DNA of 45,074 bases from Octopus bimaculoides. Its lineage: Eukaryota. Shown one piece after another: positions 568 through 45,074 of this stretch. The position numbers and the translations under genes were made by a program. A model generated the notes under the pieces. It was given only the letters and a program-made list of their open reading frames with translations. It ran no database searches and had not been told where the DNA came from. The stretch covers positions 19,752,207-19,797,280 of the forward strand of contig NC_068998.1 of NCBI RefSeq assembly GCF_001194135.2, written 5' to 3'. The first letter of the stretch is position 1, and every line of letters starts with the position of its first letter.

Positions 568-2478
568 ATGGCTACAGAAATTAGTGTAAATGTTGCTGCC
601 GAAAAAGTGATGGAAGATGACTCAAGTGACTCAGATGTTAATAGTTCGGAACATGTGATTAATCATCCTCATGAACCTGACTTCACAAAATCACAAAATT
701 GCTCTGATGATTTAAGCACAAGCAGTGAAAACGACTTACCTCAATTGCTTCATGCCCCATTGAATAAGGAATGTATACCTGTTGATAACTCACAGATTTC
801 AATCAGAGCTAAAAGAGGTCGTAAAAGAAGAAAAGAATTTACAAGATCAGAAAACAAAAAGAGAAGAAACAGTGGATTAAGTTGTATAGGCACGACACAA
901 AAATTCCCAGCCAAAAAGTTGAAAAAAAGCTGTGATTGTAAACGACTAAAATGTAACACAAAAATTTCTGAACAAAGAAGAAATACCTTGTTCAATGTTT
1001 ACTGGGAGTTAGGAGATATAAATAAGCAACGGCAGTTTATTATTAACTGCGTTTCAAAACACAGCAAAGAAAGAAAAAGAACTAAAAGTGATAATTCCAG
1101 AAGAAATTCAAGCTTGAAATATTGTTTTTGCATCGATGATGTTGAAGTGGAAGTCTGCAAAATATTTTTTCTTAACACACTTTCAATTTCAGAAACCACG
1201 GTAACAACTGCTTTAAAAAAAGGTGCAAATGGAGTGGTCGAAGGTGATAATCGTGGAAAAACAAAAAGAAATGATGAGCAGATGAATCATCGCAAAAAAG
1301 AGCTTCGTCAGCATATTTTATCACTTCTACAAGTTCCAAGTCATTATTGTAGGTCTTCAAGCAACTTACTGAGTCTCTCTTCAGAATTAACCTTGTCAAA
1401 AATGTATGACATGTATAAGGAAGTATGTAATGAAAAGGAAACACAACCCTTGAGCTACACAATATACTGGCAAACTTTTCAGTCAATGAACCTAAGTTTT
1501 CATTGTCCCCAAAAAGACCGGTGTGAAACATGTGAAAAGTTTCGAAATCTAAACATTGAAGAACAAGAAAAAGAAGCAGAAAAATTTGAAGTGCATCATC
1601 AAAAGGCAGAAAAAAATTGTGAAATTAAAACCATTTTGAAGCAAAAAGATGACAGAACCAAAGTCACAGCTGTTCTTGACTTGCAAAAAGCTCTTCCTAC
1701 TACGAAATCTGAAGTCTGATTATTTTATGATTCTCAAAACCACTCGACATAATGATATAACTAATGATGAAGTTATTTGTTTTGTCTGGAATGAAACAAA
1801 ATCTGGTCGAGGTAGTAATGAAATTGGCAGTTGCTTGTTCCAAATGCTTAGATAATGGGATGCAAATGGAGCAAAAGGAGTGAACTTCTTTAGTGATGCA
1901 TGCCCAAGACAAAACCGTAACTGAAACATTCTGGCTTTGTTTCATGCTTTCATAAACATAGAAGCAAAGAACATCAAAGTAATTAATCACTACTTCTTTG
2001 AGTCTGGACATAGCTAGAATGAAAACAATTCTGTCCACTCTGTGAATGAATGTGTAACAAAGCACTTCGAAGTGTTTATTTCTGAACAGTGGTACATGCT
2101 CATTAAATCAAAGAAAAAGAGCGACTATGTTACTGGATTGGACCTATCACAAATTTATGATTTTGCAGATGTTGTAGGTTAGACAGTGTCTAGAAAGGGA
2201 ACAGCAAAAGTTTCCAAAAGGCAGATTATGAGTTACAGAAGGGGGAAGTTTTGTACAGTTAATCTGCATTGAACGAGCCTGTGCCACTAAATGCGACATT
2301 TAAAAGAATTAAAAGCATCCAATATAAACTTATAAACAAAGAGGCTTCCAAGCCCATCCAAATAAGCAAAAAGAAAGATTTATTAAACTTGTGTCAAAAA
2401 TTTGCTTTTCCTAAGCCATAAGGTTTCTATCAAAGTTTAAAACAAGTTACCCGTGCGAATGAAGAACAGAATAAGTAA
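568..2478 (+). pseudogene. Decayed DNA transposase, probably CMC/Chapaev-like; first 383 codons open, catalytic domain disrupted
   Basis: ORF 568..1719 has CDCKRLKC, VCKIFFLNTLSISETTVTTALKK, SHYCRSSS, LSFHCPQKDRCETC and VLDLQKALP. After a stop and a frameshift it continues CFVWNETKSGRGSNEIGSCL*, FFSDACPRQNRN*, ESGHS*NENNSVH and KKKDLLNLC...FYQSLK to TAA at 2476-2478. Superfamily call is from recalled motifs. Confidence 0.75.
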
Positions 2479-3829: not shown

Positions 3830-5325
3830 TCGTTAACATGGAGAAAGCTCTTGACATGGTCCCCTGATCCTTTATCTGGTGGTAAATGCAGAAACTAGGG
3901 ATAGATGAGTGGTTCGTGAGAGCTATGCAAGGGATGCTGTCAATAAGGCGTGGGTTGGCAGTGAGTATACTGAAGAATTCCGGGCAGGGGTAAGGGTCCA
4001 CCAAGGATCAGTCTTCAGCCCCCTCTTATTCATCATAGTCTTTTAGGCAATAACAGAGGAATTCAAGACTGGATACCCCTGGGATCTCCCCTATGATGAT
4101 GACCTTGCTCTAATAGCTGAGTTAGAACTAGAGGAGAAGTTTCAGGTGTTGAAGCAAGGTCTAGAATCGAAGGGCCTTAGAGTGAATCTAGCCAAAACCA
4201 AAGTCTTAGTAAGTAGGAAGGCAGACAAATCACAAATTCCTTCAGGTAGATGTCCCTGCTTGATCTCTAGAAAAGGCATAGATAGAAACTCCATAAAATG
4301 TACCCAGTGTAAGTTATGGACACATAAGAGGTGCAGCAGTATCAAAGGGAGGCTAACTGAGAAGATAGTTTTTTTGTGTGGCAGATGCACAGAGGCAATA
4401 AACACTGAAAATGTGCAGAAAACAGCTTCTGGCACATGCCAGTGGGAAAAACAAGAAGTAGTTGATAGCTTCCACTACGTAGGTGACCAAGTCGGTAGCT
4501 GGGGTGGATGCTCTGAGAACGTAACTGCTAGAATAAGAATAGCCTGAGCAAAGTTAAGAGAGCTCCTACCTCTGCTGGTGACAAAGAGCCTCTCGCTCAG
4601 AGCGAAAGGGAGACTGTGTGGCGCATGTGTGCGAACAGCTATGTTACACAGCAGCGAAACATGGGCTGTGATTGCTGAGGACATGCATAAACTTGCAAGA
4701 AATGAAGCTAGTATGCTCCGCTGGATGTGTAATATCAGTGTGCATACTTATGACAAAAGTTGGACCTAAGAAGCATCAGATGTGGCGTGCAAGAGAGATG
4801 GCTGTACTGGTATGATCATGTGTTGCATATGTATGAGGACAGCTGTGTGAAAAAGTGTCACACCCTAACAGTGGAGGGAACCTGTGGAAGAGGTAGACCC
4901 AGGAAGACCTGGAATGAGGTGCTGAAGCTCGACCTTCAAGCATTAGGCCTCACGGAGGCAATGTCTCAAAATGCTGCTCTCAAAATGCTGAACCTTATGA
5001 AAGAAATGAAAAAGAACTGAGATATGTGGCACATTGCTGTACTCAAGGAAACCTGCCCATCACAATAGAACAGGTCCTAAAACCAAGGTACCATGTAAAA
5101 AGCACTGGTCCTGGTACCACATAAAAAAGCACTGGTGATGGTGCTACATAAAAAGCACCCAGTACACTCTATGAAGTGTTTGGTGCTAAGGGCATCCAGT
5201 CATAGAAATCAAGCCAAAACAGACTATGAAATCTGGTGTGGCTCTTGGTCTTGTCAGCTCCTGTCAAGCTGTCCTACCCATACCAGCATGGATAATCGAT
5301 GTTAAATATTGATGAGGATGATGGT
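3830..5325 (+). mobile_element. 5'-truncated RTE-clade LINE (RT C-terminal part, Cys-rich insert, 3' UTR with GAT tail)
   Basis: YDDDL-like RT motif near 4095, NLAKTKVLV, SFHYVGDQV, CVRTAMLHSSETWAV, GRGRPRKTW; many stops and frameshifts; GAT-rich tail near 5310-5325. Confidence 0.85.
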
Positions 5326-5534: not shown

Positions 5535-5611
5535 CTGCCTTTGAAATTACCATCAATGACAAGTTGGTCTTCTCTCGTCTTCAATCTTTTTCATTCCCTA
5601 GCTCTGAACAG
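5535..5611 (+). CDS. SelW2/MIEN1-like Rdx gene, copy 1, penultimate coding exon: (A)AFEITINDKLVFSRLQSFSFPSSEQ
   Basis: Acceptor ttttttttag, donor gtcagt, 77 nt, phase 1 to 0, same size and phase as the copy 2 and 3 exons. Matches the Rdx GAFE[IV]x[IV]NGxL[IV][FH]SK...FP motif. Confidence 0.9.
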
Positions 5612-8464: not shown

Positions 8465-8548
8465 ATTGTGAATTTATTACATGATGTCCAGGCAGGCAAG
8501 ACGATCCCTGTTATTGAGGAATCTAGCTCAGGCTGCATAATTCAATAA
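8465..8548 (+). CDS. Copy 1 last coding exon: IVNLLHDVQAGKTIPVIEESSSGCIIQ* (CaaX)
   Basis: Long polypyrimidine tract plus acag acceptor, phase 0. Collinear codon-for-codon with the copy 3 last exon. Ends C-I-I-Q-stop, like the MIEN1 CVIL terminus. Confidence 0.88.
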   Translation: MVNLLHDVQAGKTIPVIEESSSGCIIQ

Positions 8549-9480
8549 AACTAATTTGTTTTCCAGAAATTTCTGCAATTGTTACACCTTAAACTCTTTG
8601 AGTTTCTTTTTCTTTCTTTTTTAATTTTAAATTAATATATGTTAAAGGTCTTGACTATTGTCTTCTTTTTTAAATCCTCATTGAACTGACATATAGACAT
8701 GGACTGGCTTATATTCCAACATTATGGTATATCATACAACCTGTTTTGTCACAGTAAAGATATTTACCCAGTACCCACTCAGTATTTGCCCAATCAACGA
8801 CAACAGTTCATCTGATTGAATGAGTTAACTTTGTTCATTGGTGGAAGATGCTGAGGTGTTTTCCACACAGTGTATGTGGTAAGCGGCACCTACAAGTACT
8901 AGTTAATACTGAGTAGTCTGTTGTTATGGTAGATGGCCATTCTTAATTCCATGTGGCTACAGGTATGTCTGCAGGAGAGTAGGAGTGTCCATGTATATGG
9001 ATACACAGTGGATCTTGAAAGCTTCCATTTGTTGTATCCACTATGTTGCTCCTTGCTGCCTAGCATCAAAATATGTCACTTCTTCAATTAAGTGATCTAA
9101 TTACTCTTTGCCTTCATGATGAGGTGCTAATTAGCTTTATACATGTATTTTTTTTTTTTTTTTTGCCTTTCATATTCTTTCTTCTTTTTCTTCTCATCTA
9201 TTCTTCTCTTTTCTCTCCCTCTTCACATACTTACCATGATTCTATCTTTAACCTCATTCTCTCTTCTCCTTCTCTCTATTCCAGCTGTCTTTTACGTTAA
9301 GTATTCTATTTCTATAGTTTCTCTTTTTTTTCTTATTTCAAAGTAAATATGCAAAACGTTTCTAGTCAAGGGTGAATTCGAAATTATTCAGTGTCTTTCT
9401 TTTGAAAATTCTGTATGTAACAATTGTAGAACTAAAAATACTTTATATTGACTTATTAAAAAATTTTCATTTTGACTTTC

Positions 9481-9563
9481 TTACTGGTTATTTCTGGTTA
9501 TGAAAATTCTGGTCTAAACATGTATTGACCAGAGTTGGATAAATTGTGAGGAATAACCAGTGA
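9481..9563 (+). promoter_or_regulatory. SECIS element, copy 1
   Basis: ATGA 9500-9503, helix II AATTCTGGTC/GACCAGAGTT, apical loop TAAACATGTATT (AAA 9516-9518), GA 9538-9539, helix I 9481-9495 with 9549-9563. Confidence 0.9.
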
Positions 9564-21982: not shown

Positions 21983-22074
21983 ATGTCAGAAAATAGAAGC
22001 TCAAGCTCAACAATTGACGACACAGAAAAATCTTCTGTGTCACAGAAACACCTTCGTGTGGAAATTGAATACTG
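21983..22074 (+). CDS. Copy 2 first coding exon: MSENRSSSSTIDDTEKSSVSQKHLRVEIEY(C)
   Basis: Acceptor tttctttag before 21947, ATG at 21983, donor TG|gtgagt. LRVEIEYC matches the Rdx beta-1 strand (MIEN1 VRIVVEYC). Confidence 0.87.
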
Positions 22075-37659: not shown

Positions 37660-37741
37660 CACTGGTTATTCCACACAATTTATCCAATTCTGGTCGATAC
37701 ATGTTTAAACCAGAATTTTCATAACCAAAAATAACCAGTAA
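37660..37741 (-). promoter_or_regulatory. SECIS element, copy 3
   Basis: Minus strand: ATGA (37722-37719), helix II AATTCTGGTT/GACCAGAATT, loop TAAACATGTATC, GA (37684-37683), helix I present. Confidence 0.9.
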
Positions 37742-38718: not shown

Positions 38719-39358
38719 NNNNNNNNNNNNNNNNNNNNNNNNNNNNNNNNNNNNNNNNNNNNNNNNNNNNNNNNNNNNNNNNNNNNNNNNNNNNNNNNNN
38801 NNNNNNNNNNNNNNNNNNNNNNNNNNNNNNNNNNNNNNNNNNNNNNNNNNNNNNNNNNNNNNNNNNNNNNNNNNNNNNNNNNNNNNNNNNNNNNNNNNNN
38901 NNNNNNNNNNNNNNNNNNNNNNNNNNNNNNNNNNNNNNNNNNNNNNNNNNNNNNNNNNNNNNNNNNNNNNNNNNNNNNNNNNNNNNNNNNNNNNNNNNNN
39001 NNNNNNNNNNNNNNNNNNNNNNNNNNNNNNNNNNNNNNNNNNNNNNNNNNNNNNNNNNNNNNNNNNNNNNNNNNNNNNNNNNNNNNNNNNNNNNNNNNNN
39101 NNNNNNNNNNNNNNNNNNNNNNNNNNNNNNNNNNNNNNNNNNNNNNNNNNNNNNNNNNNNNNNNNNNNNNNNNNNNNNNNNNNNNNNNNNNNNNNNNNNN
39201 NNNNNNNNNNNNNNNNNNNNNNNNNNNNNNNNNNNNNNNNNNNNNNNNNNNNNNNNNNNNNNNNNNNNNNNNNNNNNNNNNNNNNNNNNNNNNNNNNNNN
39301 NNNNNNNNNNNNNNNNNNNNNNNNNNNNNNNNNNNNNNNNNNNNNNNNNNNNNNNNNN

Positions 39359-39407: not shown

Positions 39408-39834
39408 TCACTGCTACCACAACAGGCTACCCAACATTAACCAGTACATTTAGATGCCACTTACAACATACACTGCAATTCAAACATCACAAGACATCTC
39501 ATCACTAAACAAGGTAAACAATGAAGTGTGTTTTTGTTGTTGACTGGACACATATTGAGAAGGATAACATGTAAGGGTAGCAATACGTACTGGATAAATA
39601 TCTTCACTATAACAAGACAGGTTGTACGATGTAGATCATGATACTGGGATGTAAGCCAGTCCATATCATAGCTATATGTCTGCGTCATGAAGATACAGAA
39701 AAGTATGATAGTCAAGGGCTTTAATATGTATTAAATTATAAAGGAAGCATCAAATGAAATTGCAGGGAGTTTAAGGTGTAACATAACTGCAGCATTTTCT
39801 TGTAGATATATTAGCTTTATAGAGTTCAGCAGAC

Positions 39835-39900
39835 CTATTCATCTTTTGAAATGACAGGGATTGGTTTACCTGCTTTGGCATCACGCAATATACATAAAAT
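39835..39900 (-). CDS. Copy 3 last coding exon: ILCILRDAKAGKPIPVISKDE* (TAG), no CaaX
   Basis: Acceptor ttcttttcag, phase 0, collinear with the copy 1 last exon; 3' UTR homology follows. Confidence 0.85.
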   Translation of the reverse strand: MLCILRDAKAGKPIPVISKDE

Positions 39901-39959
39901 CTGAAAAGAAAAAGTAAATAAATAGATAATACTCTAAAAATTTATAATAAATTAGTATA

Positions 39960-42149: not shown

Positions 42150-42226
42150 CTGTTCATGGACAGCATTAGAACCAGACTCAAGTCGAGAGTGAATAAACTG
42201 ACCATTGACAGAAACTTCAAAGGCAC
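42150..42226 (-). CDS. Copy 3 penultimate coding exon: (G)AFEVSVNGQFIHSRLESGSNAVHEQ
   Basis: Acceptor atatattag, donor gtaaat, 77 nt, same phases as the paralogous exons. Confidence 0.88.
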
Positions 42227-42789
42227 CTAATATATGAGATGGGTTCAATTAGAGATGTTTGCAAGCGTTGAATGCAAAAATATTTCCTACACTATAACAT
42301 TAGGCAACAGAATTTTGAAAAACCTATAAATTATGAAATCTTGCTTCCAGTAAAGTTAAAAATACAACCCCCACCCCCAAAAAAAAAACTTACATTGTAA
42401 AGTCCATGACAATTTTAGTTTAAATATAAAATAATTTTGTTATTTTGGTGACAAAAGAACTTAGTTATGAATAACCGCTGCCTGACTGGTCACGTGCCGG
42501 TGGCATGTGAAAAGCACCATTCGAACATGATTGTTGTCAATGCCACCTGACTGGCTCCCATGCCAGTGGCACGTAAAAAAAGCACCCACTACTCTCTCGG
42601 AGTGGTTGGCATTAGGAAGGTCATCCTGAAACTTTGCCAGATTGGATTGGAGCCTGGTGCAGCCTTCTGACTTGCCATCCCTCAGTCAACTGTCCAACCC
42701 ATGCCAGCATGGAAAGCAGACATTAAACGACGACGACGATGACAATGATATATATATGTATATATACATACATTGATATATGGACAATA

Positions 42790-43520
42790 CGAGAGGGTAC
42801 CCAAAAGTAACTGGAAAGGTTCTCTGTGGGACAAGACCATTGTCATTAAGGCTTCCTTTACTAGAAGCCACTTGATGCGACCCTCAGGCATCAGTCTGCT
42901 GACCAGCAGCATCATGTACAGCCATATAGTGCATCTTTGTTTTGCAGTGCTTCTCCTCTGTTTGTCAATTTTTGTGATGGCTGAAACAAAGGAGCAGTGT
43001 GCTTCCATGAAATTCTGTTTTCTATTGAAGAAAATGGTTGCTGAAACAATTGTCATGCTTCAAACAACTTACAAAGATACTGCCATGAACGAAACACAAG
43101 GTTATGAGTGGTTTTCACACTTTAGGAATGGTCAGTTGTTGCTTGAAGACCGACCTCGTTCAGGGCAACTGTCAACCTCCCGAATGAATGAAAACATCAT
43201 GAAAATTCATGAACTGATCTTGGAGGACCATCACTGAACAATTGACAAACTTGTTGATATGACTTGTGTGTCCTAGAGTGCCTGCCAACGAATTTTGAGT
43301 GAGGAATTGTGAATGAAAAAGAGGTGCAGCAAAATGTGTGCCTCGCTTGCTCACAGAAGATCAAAAGCAGTTATGACTGAATGCATGTTCTGAACTGAAA
43401 GAACAATTGGAGTTGATCAGGACTTTTTTTTCGAAGGCCATCACTGGTAATGCTATGGAATTTTTAGATGTGGAAGAGGTGAAAGAAAAAATAACAGAGG
43501 CGTTAATAGGCATCACTTCT
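42790..43520 (+). mobile_element. Internally deleted mariner remnant
   Basis: EQCASMKFCFLLKKMVAETIVMLQTTY...YEWFSHFRNGQLLLEDRPRSG, ILSEEL; TIR-like start TA|CGAGAGGGTACCCAAAAGTAAC. Confidence 0.78.
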
Positions 43521-44290: not shown

Positions 44291-44548
44291 TACCACAAAA
44301 AGTAGATTTGCTATACCAGTCTTCATTCCTATCAAACCTACTTTTAATCATCATTGCATCTCTTGCTAAATAAACTATCCACCAGGTTTTACATGCAATA
44401 TTTCATCCTAAAGATCGTTGTTCTAAAAAATACTTCTGTTACATTGTTGAAAAAATGAAGTAACCTCCAACTGTGTTATGTGTCTATTTAGCCAACTGAT
44501 CTGAGAGACAAATGTGTAATACTTATATAATAATAAAACAAATCTCAC

Positions 44549-44649
44549 CAAAAGTCTTGCTAATAATGTCTACAACTTTAGCTTCAGGAAACTCATTCTG
44601 GATGTCTTTACGGAGTGAATTCATCTTGTTCCATCCACCTCAGGCATCA
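44549..44649 (-). CDS. Copy 3 Sec-containing exon: (C)DA-U-GGWNKMNSLRKDIQNEFPEAKVVDIISKTF(G); TGA at 44642-44640
   Basis: Acceptor ttgttttatag, donor G|gtgaga, 101 nt as in copy 2. The Cys codon requires a TG-ending upstream exon that is not in the window. Confidence 0.88.
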
Positions 44650-45074
44650 CTATAAAACAAAATCATACACTGTCTGTTAATAATTACATTTTAGTGAGAA
44701 AAATAGCTAGAGATGATAATAAAAAATAAACTGAAATGTCAAGTTAATCAAAATGGGAGTGTTCACTGTTCTTAATTGGTGTTGATTTTTATAAATACCA
44801 ACATCTAAGAAAAAAAAATTCCCAACACCTTAATAACCATTATAAATATAAGGAACTTGGGATCTTTTTTAAAACGGGGGCCACATTTTTCATTAACGAA
44901 ACACTTTGAAACTTGGAACACTGGTAGAATGTGTCACATAAAACATCTTTTTCTCTTAGTCTTCTTAAAAAAAAAAGAAATCCATAAGTTATTCCATGTT
45001 AAAGTTGTCGTATTTCTGTAATTTCAACCAATCACTGACGTCCATTCAGCCGATATACATTAAGTGCCGACTAC

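What the first reader, a model, noticed from the sequence alone, without database searches (positions are those of the whole stretch)
39817..39837. Copy 3 lost its CaaX box and hides a cryptic V-C-U-T-L tail behind a TAG
Seen: codons 22-28 of the last exon are TCA GGC TGC ATA ATT CAA TAA in copy 1 and TAG GTC TGC TGA ACT CTA TAA in copy 3, with the same length, Cys and final stop. By default copy 3 ends at ...SKDE and is unprenylated, unlike copy 1. Speculation: TAG in AATAGG is the preferred ADAR triplet, and coleoids recode extensively. Editing to UIG (Trp) in a SECIS-bearing mRNA would give ...DE-W-V-C-U-T-L, an adjacent Cys-Sec pair reminiscent of the thioredoxin reductase GCUG tail. Simple decay after the premature stop explains the sequence equally well.
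Basis: partly seen in the sequence, partly recalled or inferred. Interest (0 to 1): 0.7.

Follow-up and report, generated by a model that had tools for sequence, protein, structure and literature searches.

The report
Octopus MIEN1-like selenoprotein copy without prenylation box
One of several tandem octopus copies of a small selenium-containing redox protein (SELENOW2/MIEN1 family) lost its lipid-anchor signal through an old premature stop codon; the "hidden tail" behind that stop is the fossil of the old ending, with no sign that it is ever translated.

Summary
The sequence observation is correct. On the minus strand, 39837-39817 reads TAG GTC TGC TGA ACT CTA TAA. It aligns codon for codon with copy 1's TCA GGC TGC ATA ATT CAA TAA (8528-8548).

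The genes are tandem paralogues of the SELENOW2/MIEN1 (Rdx12) group. [quoted passage not shown] A C-terminal CaaX box is the hallmark of this family: human MIEN1 ends CVIL and is geranylgeranylated, and 114 of 152 closest relatives end C-x-x-x. Copy 1 (CIIQ here, CIIL or CVIL in relatives) and copy 2 (CTIL in O. vulgaris) keep the box.

Copy 3 is spliced and expressed, and it carries the Sec codon and a conserved SECIS. It ends at a TAG six codons early. TAG and TGA are shared with O. vulgaris and a third Octopus species, but only at the neutral 3'UTR rate, and the closing TAA is TTA in O. vulgaris. A fourth paralogue was truncated independently.

Five RNA assemblies and the few raw reads available show unedited TAG. 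No editing duplex stands out.

Verdict: CaaX loss plus relic sequence. The editing/Sec tail is unsupported, though low-level editing is not excluded.

The parts
44549..44649 (-). Copy 3 exon 2 (101 nt). It starts with the third base of the Cys codon, then D-A-U-GGWNKMNSLRKDIQNEFPEAKVVDIISKTF. The Sec codon TGA is at 44642-44640.
   Evidence: Sequence and pattern hit. RNA contigs of X1, X2 and X12 cover 44546-44650 with no mismatch. In X1 and X12 they continue upstream into exon 1 (...EELYVVIEY + C), which lies beyond the window end.
42150..42226 (-). Copy 3 exon 3 (77 nt): (G)AFEVSVNGQFIHSRLESGSNAVHEQ.
   Evidence: Sequence. Contigs of X1 and X2 join 42150 directly to 39900.
39838..39900 (-). 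Coding part of copy 3's last exon: ILCILRDAKAGKPIPVISKDE.
   Evidence: RNA contigs and reads.
39835..39837 (-). TAG, the working stop codon of copy 3, six codons before the ancestral stop.
   Evidence: Unchanged in RNA contigs of X1, X2 and X4 (same species) and X8 and X12 (sister species), and in about 3 raw reads of X16. Also TAG in O. vulgaris.
39817..39834 (-). Relic of the ancestral x-C-a-a-L-stop ending, now 3'UTR: GTC TGC TGA ACT CTA TAA.
   Evidence: Codon-for-codon alignment with copy 1, copy 2 (O. vulgaris) and copy 4 (O. vulgaris).
39767..39800 (-). 3'UTR block conserved in copies 1-3 (...TGCTGCAGTTATGTTACACCTTAAACTC).
   Evidence: Alignment; a similar motif follows copy 4's stop in O. 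vulgaris. The 36 nt after the relic are 35/36 identical to O. vulgaris, against 56/63 for the coding part of the same exon.
37667..37730 (-). SECIS element of copy 3.
   Evidence: Rfam SECIS_1 scores 29.6 bits, E 0.0037, below the gathering score of 35. It is 94.5% identical to copy 1's SECIS and 83-97% identical among six paralogue and orthologue copies, while the rest of the 3'UTR is about 66-70%. RNA continuity from 39420 to this point was not shown, because an N gap (38719-39358) lies between.
5535..5611 (+). Copy 1 exon 3: (A)AFEITINDKLVFSRLQSFSFPSSEQ.
   Evidence: It is 100% identical to transcript L002 at 223-300.
8465..8548 (+). Copy 1 last exon: IVNLLHDVQAGKTIPVIEESSSGCIIQ plus the TAA stop. 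The CaaX codons are 8534-8545.
   Evidence: Depth is about 62 reads in X16, and all show A at 8544 (CAA, Gln); the sister species has T (CTA, Leu). Full-length transcript L002 ends ...SGCIIL, and the more distant L003 ends ...SSCVIL.
9492..9552 (+). SECIS element of copy 1.
   Evidence: Rfam SECIS_1 scores 29.1 bits, E 0.0033. Alignments.
21983..22074 (+). Copy 2 exon 1: MSENRSSSSTIDDTEKSSVSQKHLRVEIEY plus TG of the Cys codon.
   Evidence: It parallels O. vulgaris copy 3 exon 1, MSTKEESAQKTEVENKNPDELYVVIEY+TG.
24121..24221 (+). Copy 2 exon 2 (101 nt): (C)QSU GGWKRMESLRKAIYREFPEARVMDTVSKKR. The Sec TGA is at 24128-24130.
24683..24759 (+). Copy 2 exon 3: (G)AFEVSINGNLFFSHLESCCYPDSDK.
27091..27779 (.). 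Assembly gap (N run) that should hold copy 2's last exon.
   Evidence: Synteny with O. vulgaris: window 27809-28828 matches L001 22288-21304, and the exon sits at L001 22626-22546. It encodes VVALLHDVQDGKKPPVVERSNSRCTIL and a stop.
30636..30725 (+). SECIS region of copy 2.
   Evidence: It aligns with the other SECIS elements, and the AUGA / AAA / GA core is kept. Rfam did not report it in the larger 8-kb search.

Best explanation
Copy 3 is an expressed paralogue of the SELENOW2/MIEN1 (Rdx12) selenoprotein family, and the window holds parts of three tandem copies. The ancestral last exon had 27 codons and ended in a CaaX prenylation box (C-[I/V/T]-I-L), as in human MIEN1. In the copy 3 lineage, before the split of at least three Octopus species, codon 22 became TAG. 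Translation therefore stops at ...SKDE, and the protein has no Cys at position -4, so it cannot be prenylated. It is predicted to be a soluble thioredoxin-fold CxxU redox protein rather than a membrane-anchored one. The 18 nt after TAG are the untranslated fossil of the old ending. The Cys codon, the final CTA and the TAA survive; the a1 codon has drifted to TGA and the a2 codon to ACT. Shown here: the sequence, the splicing, the expression, family membership, CaaX conservation in the sister copies, and the unedited TAG in RNA. Inferred: the loss of prenylation, the change of localisation, and that Sec is actually inserted at the CxxU codon.
For: Family: Pfam Rdx, E 1e-13 to 4e-17. The best solved relative is human MIEN1/C17orf37 (2LJK): E 1e-12 for copy 1, aligned end to end including CIIL against CVIL, and 8e-9 for copy 3. 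SelW reaches only about 0.003-0.006.
CaaX as family hallmark: 114 of 152 closest relatives among 1.8 billion proteins end C-x-x-x, with X = L in 63, M in 22 and Q in 8. MIEN1's CVIL is described as a CAAX motif for geranylgeranyltransferase-I whose modification promotes membrane association (PMC3527542).
Ancestral state: copy 1 ends CIIQ, CIIL or CVIL, and copy 2 ends CTIL, all at the same codons as copy 3's relic.
Copy 3 is a live gene: spliced contigs run exon 1 to 2 to 3 to 4 in two species. The CxxU TGA is intact. Its SECIS is 94.5% identical to copy 1's, against about 66-70% for the rest of the UTR.
The TAG is old and unedited: it is present in O. vulgaris and in sister-species RNA. RNA contigs of X1, X2, X4, X8 and X12 and the X16 reads show no change.
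Neutral behaviour of the tail: 20/21 identical to O. vulgaris, with P(at most 1 difference) = 0.65 at the UTR rate; 21/21 identical to the sister species, with P = 0.40.
Copy 4 of O. vulgaris carries a different premature stop (TAA at codon 19) in front of the relic TTG GGC TGC TCT ACT CTA TAT.
Against: dN/dS of copy 3 between this species and O. vulgaris is about 0.96 (4 synonymous and 14 non-synonymous changes), so constraint on the protein is weak or the protein is evolving fast. Raw-read depth at the TAG is only about 3, and contigs report only the major allele, so minor editing is not excluded. Continuity of the mRNA from the stop to the SECIS about 2.1 kb downstream, across an N gap, was not shown. 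Prenylation of copies 1 and 2, and its absence in copy 3, are predicted from sequence only.
Confidence: 0.85

Rival explanations
1. Conditional recoding. ADAR edits UAG to UIG (Trp) in some tissue, and the SECIS then allows Sec insertion at the next UGA. The result is ...DE-W-V-C-U-T-L, either a Cys-Sec redox tail or a restored CaaX-like ending.
For: UAG with a 3' G is a favoured ADAR triplet (general knowledge). UAG-to-UGG stop-loss editing is recognised in coleoids (PMC8382921). The mRNA family does carry a SECIS. The A is predicted to pair within a short local hairpin (P paired 0.88). TAG, TGC and TGA are present in all three Octopus species examined.
Against: No A-to-G change appears in five RNA assemblies from two species or in the raw reads available. 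Conservation equals the neutral 3'UTR expectation. The closing stop is not conserved in O. vulgaris (TTA). Copy 4 has TTG and TCT at these codons behind another stop. The local hairpin is only about 16 imperfect base pairs, and no distal complement beats shuffled controls (best -24.0 kcal/mol against shuffle minima of -20.6 to -26.4). The paralogue copy 1, at about 60x depth in the same run, shows no editing at 3% or more over 131 nt. If C-U-T-L were used as a CaaX box, normal -aaX proteolysis would remove the Sec, so the two proposed functions exclude each other (inference from the known CaaX pathway).
Confidence: 0.02
2. Copy 3 is a transcribed but functionless gene on its way to becoming a pseudogene. 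The TAG was the first disabling hit, and the whole coding sequence now drifts.
For: dN/dS is about 0.96 against O. vulgaris, and coding identity (92.5%) is no higher than the 3'UTR (94.1%) or the introns (91-96%). The coding part of the last exon (56/63) is less conserved than the adjacent UTR (35/36). Expression in X16 is about 20-fold lower than copy 1.
Against: The reading frame, all splice sites, the CxxU TGA and the start of exon 2 are intact in three species. The SECIS has been kept at 94.5% identity to copy 1 since the duplication, while the surrounding UTR fell to about 66-70%. Assembler depth is substantial in some RNA runs (114 and 50 in the sister species; the 722 in X1 may be inflated by a chimeric contig). 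The numbers behind dN/dS are small (18 changes).
Confidence: 0.11
3. Translational readthrough of the TAG without editing extends a fraction of the protein into the relic tail.
For: Nothing beyond the open frame up to the TGA, three codons on.
Against: The +4 base is G, and a purine at +4 favours termination (general knowledge). No known readthrough context (such as CARYYA or CUAG) follows the stop. The downstream frame is not conserved beyond neutrality.
Confidence: 0.01

Closest known systems
MIEN1 (C17orf37, Rdx12), human, PDB 2LJK
   Same: Thioredoxin-like Rdx fold. Redox motif at the same place (CxxC in human, CxxU here). The GAFE[IV]xINGxLVFSKLE core. A C-terminal tail of the same length that ends in a CaaX box in copies 1 and 2 (CIIQ/CIIL and CTIL, against CVIL). 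Copy 1 aligns end to end with E 1e-12.
   Different: The octopus genes use Sec (TGA plus SECIS) rather than Cys. Copy 3, and copy 4 in O. vulgaris, stop before the CaaX box and so lack the geranylgeranylation signal on which MIEN1's membrane association depends (PMC3527542, PMC6738349).
SELENOW2, the invertebrate and fish sister clade of MIEN1
   Same: PMC13134290 places all invertebrate members of the SELENOW2/MIEN1 group in the SELENOW2 branch and describes Sec-containing members. The octopus genes are Sec-containing invertebrate members of that group, so this is the name they would receive.
   Different: I built no phylogeny, so the assignment rests on that paper's statement plus the best hit to MIEN1. 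A tandem cluster of three copies (four in O. vulgaris), with two members truncated independently before the CaaX box, did not turn up in the papers I searched.
Selenoprotein W (SELENOW1), mouse, PDB 2NPB
   Same: Same Rdx fold and CxxU motif, and similar size.
   Different: A much weaker match (E 0.003-0.006). SelW has no CaaX tail and a shorter N-terminus.
C-terminal Gly-Cys-Sec-Gly redox centre of thioredoxin reductase
   Same: Only that a Cys codon and a TGA are adjacent near a 3' end in a SECIS-bearing mRNA.
   Different: Here the pair lies behind a stop codon in the 3'UTR. The context is V-C-U-T, not G-C-U-G. The protein is not a flavoenzyme. The TGA is best explained by one or two substitutions in a former aliphatic (a1) codon.
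Coleoid stop-loss (UAG to UGG) A-to-I editing sites
   Same: The triplet and its 3' G fit ADAR preference, and such sites exist in coleoids (PMC8382921).
   Different: No RNA-DNA mismatch was seen here, and no convincing duplex was found.

Membership tests
SELENOW2/MIEN1 (Rdx12) group of the Rdx family | Rdx (SelT/SelW/SelH-type thioredoxin-like) domain | tested here: met
   Pfam PF10262: copy 1 at 62.5 bits, copy 3 at 51.1 bits, copy 2 at 48.9 bits; cut-off 22.6.
SELENOW2/MIEN1 (Rdx12) group of the Rdx family | Closer to MIEN1 than to SelW, SelT or SelH | tested here: met
   Search of PDB sequences: 2LJK (C17orf37/MIEN1) at E 1e-12 (copy 1) and 8e-9 (copy 3), against SelW 2NPB at 0.006 and 0.003. 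The best library relatives include vertebrate MIEN1 (for example P0048 and P0056). No tree was built.
SELENOW2/MIEN1 (Rdx12) group of the Rdx family | CxxU or CxxC redox motif after the first beta strand | tested here: met
   Copy 3 has ...VVIEY-C-D-A-U-GGW, with TGA at 44642-44640 and the Cys codon split by intron 1; this is confirmed in spliced RNA contigs. Copy 2 has C-Q-S-U. Copy 1 has C-N-S-U (L002).
SELENOW2/MIEN1 (Rdx12) group of the Rdx family | [quoted passage not shown] | tested here: met
   SECIS_1 hits of 29.6 and 29.1 bits (E 0.003-0.004), below Rfam's gathering score of 35. The AUGA...AAA...GA core is kept. Identity is 83-97% among six paralogue and orthologue copies within otherwise diverged UTRs. 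Function was not tested.
SELENOW2/MIEN1 (Rdx12) group of the Rdx family | C-terminal CaaX prenylation box | tested here: not met
   Copy 3 ends ...ISKDE at TAG 39837-39835. The feature is met in copy 1 (CIIQ; CIIL and CVIL in relatives) and copy 2 (CTIL in O. vulgaris). Copy 3 is a family member by descent that has lost this feature.
Thioredoxin-reductase-type C-terminal Cys-Sec redox centre | Cys-Sec pair inside the translated reading frame, next to the C-terminus | tested here: not met
   The TGC-TGA pair lies after the TAG stop, and RNA carries TAG.
Thioredoxin-reductase-type C-terminal Cys-Sec redox centre | Conserved Gly-Cys-Sec-Gly context, kept by selection | tested here: not met
   The context is V-C-U-T. 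Conservation equals the neutral 3'UTR rate, the closing stop is lost in O. vulgaris, and copy 4 has TCT in place of TGA.
ADAR stop-loss recoding site | A-to-G difference between RNA and genome at the stop codon's A | tested here: not met
   None is seen in contigs of X1, X2 and X4 (same species) or X8 and X12 (sister species), nor in about 3 raw reads of X16. Power is low: contigs show only the major allele, so minority editing is not excluded.
ADAR stop-loss recoding site | Double-stranded RNA structure that holds the edited A | tested here: inconclusive
   A short imperfect local hairpin is predicted (P paired 0.88). No distal complement in 7 kb of pre-mRNA beats shuffled controls.
ADAR stop-loss recoding site | Favoured sequence context (5' U or A, 3' G) | tested here: met
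   The context is A-A-U-A-G-G at 39839-39834. The preference itself is from general knowledge.

The most novel reading that the evidence does not exclude
In some tissue or condition not sampled here, the UAG of copy 3 is edited to UGG and the SECIS-bearing mRNA then inserts Sec at the next UGA. This would give a minor isoform ending W-V-C-U-T-L: an editing-dependent switch that restores a CaaX-like ending, or creates a Cys-Sec pair, on an otherwise soluble selenoprotein.
Probability: 0.02. Interest if true: 0.8.

Novelty: new member of a known kind. Interest (0 to 1): 0.22.

Why it matters
If the editing/Sec reading were true, it would be the first case of two recoding systems (A-to-I stop-loss and Sec insertion) acting in series to build a protein tail. 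The evidence does not point that way.

What is actually there is more modest but useful. Octopus genomes hold a tandem cluster of Sec-containing SELENOW2/MIEN1 genes that standard annotation truncates at the Sec codon. Two members keep the family's prenylation box. Two have lost it through independent premature stops. That is a natural experiment on whether the lipid anchor is needed for this poorly understood redox protein. In humans, prenylated MIEN1 promotes cell migration. The work also corrects the gene models and shows that copy 2's last exon is hidden in an assembly gap.

Tried and rejected
- A six-frame self-comparison of the window was swamped by SINE, LINE and microsatellite repeats.
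- A regex for C-x-x-U inside single open frames found nothing relevant, because intron 1 splits the Cys codon. The exon was found instead through the O. vulgaris protein P0001.
- Copy 1's exons 1-2 are not in the window. They were read from Logan transcript L002.
- I first took the family for SelT, SelH or SelW from memory. The PDB and literature searches corrected this to MIEN1/SELENOW2.
- Only three raw-read RNA runs exist for the species, and they give about 3 reads over the TAG.
- The Rfam E-value search on the fetched loci was flooded by microsatellite matches to miRNA models and did not list the SECIS elements. I used direct alignment instead.
- A search for the SRA accessions in papers, to name the species, gave nothing.
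- The 2806-nt X1 contig, which seemed to give copy 3 a 2.1-kb 5' region, turned out to carry antisense 3'UTR like that of copy 4. I treat it as chimeric or as overlapping divergent transcripts, not as evidence of a long 5'UTR.

Full report
**1. The observation**

On the minus strand the window reads ...AAA GAT GAA TAG GTC TGC TGA ACT CTA TAA at 39846-39817. This follows an exon that begins after a polypyrimidine tract and AG acceptor at 39900 and encodes ILCILRDAKAGKPIPVISKDE. On the plus strand, 8528-8548 reads TCA GGC TGC ATA ATT CAA TAA, at the end of an exon that begins at 8465 and encodes IVNLLHDVQAGKTIPVIEESSSGCIIQ. The two exons and their proximal 3'UTRs are homologous (blastn 69.6% over 214 nt, E 2e-18). 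They align without gaps over the 84 nt of the ancestral exon. The shared length, Cys codon and final stop reflect descent, not coincidence.

**2. What the genes are**

The penultimate exons, which begin GAFE[VI]..., pointed to the Rdx thioredoxin-like family. A search with copy 3's C-terminus returned one protein, an Octopus vulgaris "SelT/SelW/SelH family protein" (P0001). Its locus (L001) is syntenic with the window. That protein led me to exon 2 in the window.

Exon 2 is 101 nt in both copy 3 (44649-44549) and copy 2 (24121-24221). In each it starts with the last base of a Cys codon and continues x-x-TGA-GGx-GGx-TGG. This gives C-D-A-U in copy 3 and C-Q-S-U in copy 2. Exon 1 encodes a charged N-terminus that ends ...(V/I)xIEY followed by TG. 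It lies at 21983-22074 for copy 2 and beyond the window end for copy 3.

RNA contigs confirm the copy 3 splices in two species. In X1 and X12 they join exon 1 (...EELYVVIEY) to exon 2. Contigs then join exon 2 to exon 3 (42226-42150) and exon 3 to exon 4 (39900 onward).

Each copy has a SECIS-like element in its 3'UTR:
- Copy 1 at 9492-9552: 29.1 bits, E 0.003.
- Copy 3 at 37730-37667: 29.6 bits, E 0.004.
- Copy 2 near 30636-30725, found by alignment only.

These scores are below Rfam's gathering score of 35. However, the elements are 83-97% identical among six paralogue and orthologue copies, while the surrounding UTRs are only about 66-70% identical. That is the signature of a maintained element.

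**3. The family is SELENOW2/MIEN1, and CaaX is its hallmark**

A Logan transcript from a related species (L002, about 95% identical in the UTR) gives full-length copy 1:

MTEHDVCGIASDLNVHIEYCNSUGYEDRVDELHTKIQRDVPEASVTNSISDRTAAFEITINDKLVFSRLQSFSFPSSEQIVNLLHDVQAGKTIPVIEESSSGCIIL

Against all PDB sequences its best match is human C17orf37/MIEN1 (2LJK, E 1e-12). The alignment runs end to end, so that CIIL lies on MIEN1's CVIL. SelW scores only 0.006. Copy 3 behaves the same way (8e-9 against 0.003). Pfam gives Rdx for all copies.

MIEN1's CVIL is described as a CAAX motif for geranylgeranyltransferase-I, and its modification drives membrane association (PMC3527542; PMC6738349 abstract). A 2026 survey places all invertebrate members of this group in the SELENOW2 branch. 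It treats MIEN1 (formerly Rdx12) as a gnathostome duplicate that uses Sec in several ray-finned fish lineages and Cys in amniotes (PMC13134290).

A profile search of 1.84 billion representative proteins returned 237 relatives. Of the 152 sequences on hand, 114 end in C-x-x-x, with X = L in 63, M in 22 and Q in 8. The CaaX box of copy 1 is therefore not an oddity. It is the normal ending of this family.

**4. Copy 3 lost the box; the tail is its fossil**

Codons 19-28 of the last exon, aligned:

| Copy | Codons 19-28 |
|---|---|
| Copy 1 | GAA TCT AGC TCA GGC TGC ATA ATT CAA TAA (CTA in related species) |
| Copy 2, O. vulgaris | CGA TCT AAT TCC AGG TGC ACA ATT CTA TAA |
| Copy 3 | AAA GAT GAA TAG GTC TGC TGA ACT CTA TAA |
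| Copy 4, O. vulgaris | TAA ACC AAT TTG GGC TGC TCT ACT CTA TAT |

Copy 2's last exon lies in the N gap 27091-27779 of this assembly and was read from O. vulgaris. Copy 4 is a fourth paralogue (P0015, locus L004). It lies outside the window, head to head with copy 3, and was found through the representative search.

The ancestral ending was x-x-C-[I/V/T]-I-L-stop. Copy 3 stops at codon 22 and copy 4 at codon 19, so the two truncations are independent. Copies 3 and 4 share ACT at the a2 position. An ancestor with TCG ... TGC TCA ACT CTA TAA would give copy 3's TAG and TGA, and copy 4's TTG and TCT, by single substitutions each. This ancestor is an inference.

**5. Tests of the cryptic-tail idea**

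(a) Editing.
- RNA contigs of X1, X2 and X4 (same species) cover the site with zero mismatches.
- Contigs of X8 and X12 (a sister species, about 4% diverged) are unchanged across 39817-39837.
- The only raw-read runs (X16-X18) give about 3 reads over the site, with no change listed.
- Contigs report only the major allele, so editing as the major RNA form is excluded in these samples, but low-level editing is not.
- In X16 the paralogue copy 1 has about 60x depth and no change at 3% or more over 131 nt.

(b) Conservation.
- O. vulgaris has TAG GTC TGC TGA ACT CTA TTA AGC TAA. TAG and TGA are shared, but the closing stop is not.
- Identity in the 21 nt is 20/21 to O. vulgaris, where the 3'UTR is 94.1% identical, and 21/21 to the sister species, where the transcript overall is about 95.7% identical (20 mismatches over 463 nt).
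- The chance of such conservation under neutrality is 0.65 and 0.40 respectively.
- The next 36 nt of UTR are 35/36 identical and belong to a block conserved in copies 1-3. The coding part of the same exon is only 56/63 identical. The tail's conservation therefore tracks a UTR element, not a reading frame.

(c) Structure.
- The A is predicted to pair in a short imperfect local hairpin.
- No distal complement in 7 kb of pre-mRNA beats shuffled controls.

(d) Logic.
- If C-U-T-L acted as a CaaX box, -aaX proteolysis would remove the Sec.
- The +4 G after UAG favours termination. Both points come from general knowledge.

Stop-loss UAG-to-UGG editing does exist in coleoids (PMC8382921), so the idea is mechanistically possible. 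Nothing here supports it.

**6. Is copy 3 functional?**

For function:
- The frame, the splice sites and the Sec codon are intact in three species.
- The SECIS is maintained.
- Assembler depth is appreciable in some RNA runs. X1's 722 is probably inflated by a chimeric contig.

Against function:
- dN/dS against O. vulgaris is about 0.96, from 4 synonymous and 14 non-synonymous changes.
- Expression in X16 is about 20-fold lower than copy 1.

I favour a live, fast-evolving, non-prenylated paralogue (confidence 0.85 for CaaX loss plus relic; that reading covers both a functional and a weakly constrained protein). I keep "transcribed pseudogene in the making" as a rival at about 0.1.

**7. Comparison with what is known, and novelty**

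The family, its Sec and Cys forms, and its CaaX box are all known. What is new here:
- The octopus tandem cluster of Sec-containing members.
- The two independent losses of the box.
- The species-specific L-to-Q change at copy 1's X position. All 62 reads in X16 show CAA, while the sister species has CTA. This predicts a switch from a GGTase-I substrate to an FTase substrate.

This makes copy 3 a new member of a known kind. The headline speculation is not supported, so interest is low to moderate.

Noticed in passing
window 27091-27779 (N gap); L001 22546-22626 (-): Copy 2's last exon is missing from this assembly and should lie in the N gap. In O. vulgaris the syntenic exon encodes VVALLHDVQDGKKPPVVERSNSRCTIL, with an intact CaaX box.
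   Followed up: partly
window 8543-8545 (+): Copy 1's CaaX X residue is Gln (CAA) in this species; all of about 62 reads in X16 show it. It is Leu (CTA) in the sister species, in transcripts L002 and L003 and in copy 2, and CTA also survives as a relic in copies 3 and 4. This predicts a change from a geranylgeranyl to a farnesyl acceptor.
   Followed up: partly
L004 (O. vulgaris OX597831.1 56870897-56899986), outside the window beyond 45074: A fourth paralogue lies head to head with copy 3. It has C-Q-A-U in exon 2, and its last exon ends ...DGKQLKAVH at a TAA at codon 19, an independent loss of the CaaX box. Its own SECIS copy is at L004 24397-24485.
   Followed up: partly
window 39767-39800 (-) and about 8563-8594 (+); also 39600-39690 (-) and 8690-8770 (+): 3'UTR blocks shared by the paralogues (TGCTGCA[AG]TTATGTTACAC[CT]TTAAACTC, and a GACATATAG...GGACTGGCTTA... 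block). Between species the proximal UTR block of copy 3 is better conserved than the coding part of its last exon. The function is unknown.
   Followed up: no
X1 contig of 2806 nt, laid on window 39420-39903, 42150-42227 and 44546-44650: One RNA contig carries the antisense of a 3'UTR like that of copy 4 (record 1005-1101), followed by copy 3 exons 2-4 in sense. This is either a chimeric assembly or overlapping divergent transcripts of the head-to-head pair. Its depth figure (722) is therefore unreliable for copy 3.
   Followed up: partly
window 44651 (-): The X2 contig joins exon 2 to a different upstream sequence (...GATGGGGAGAGGACTTTCAGAAAATTCACA), one base off the usual acceptor. This may be an alternative non-coding first exon.
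   Followed up: no
window 39499: One low-depth RNA contig (X3, depth 2.4) has T>C on the plus strand, which is A>G on the copy 3 transcript. It could be a SNP or a 3'UTR editing site.
   Followed up: no
window 42773-43237 (+); 568-1719 (+); 4146-5020 (+): The introns hold transposon remains. There is a Mos1-type HTH_48 ORF in copy 3's intron 2 (E 8.6e-07). A 383-aa ORF and a PHD-like ORF lie upstream of copy 1's exon 3, with no clear Pfam identity. SINE-like repeats and TG/TA microsatellites are abundant.
   Followed up: partly
public annotation (P0001, P0015; O. vulgaris): The annotated O. vulgaris proteins of this cluster start at the first Met after the Sec codon, or at a spurious distant exon. 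The selenoprotein nature and true N-termini of these genes are therefore missed in the public gene models.
   Followed up: partly
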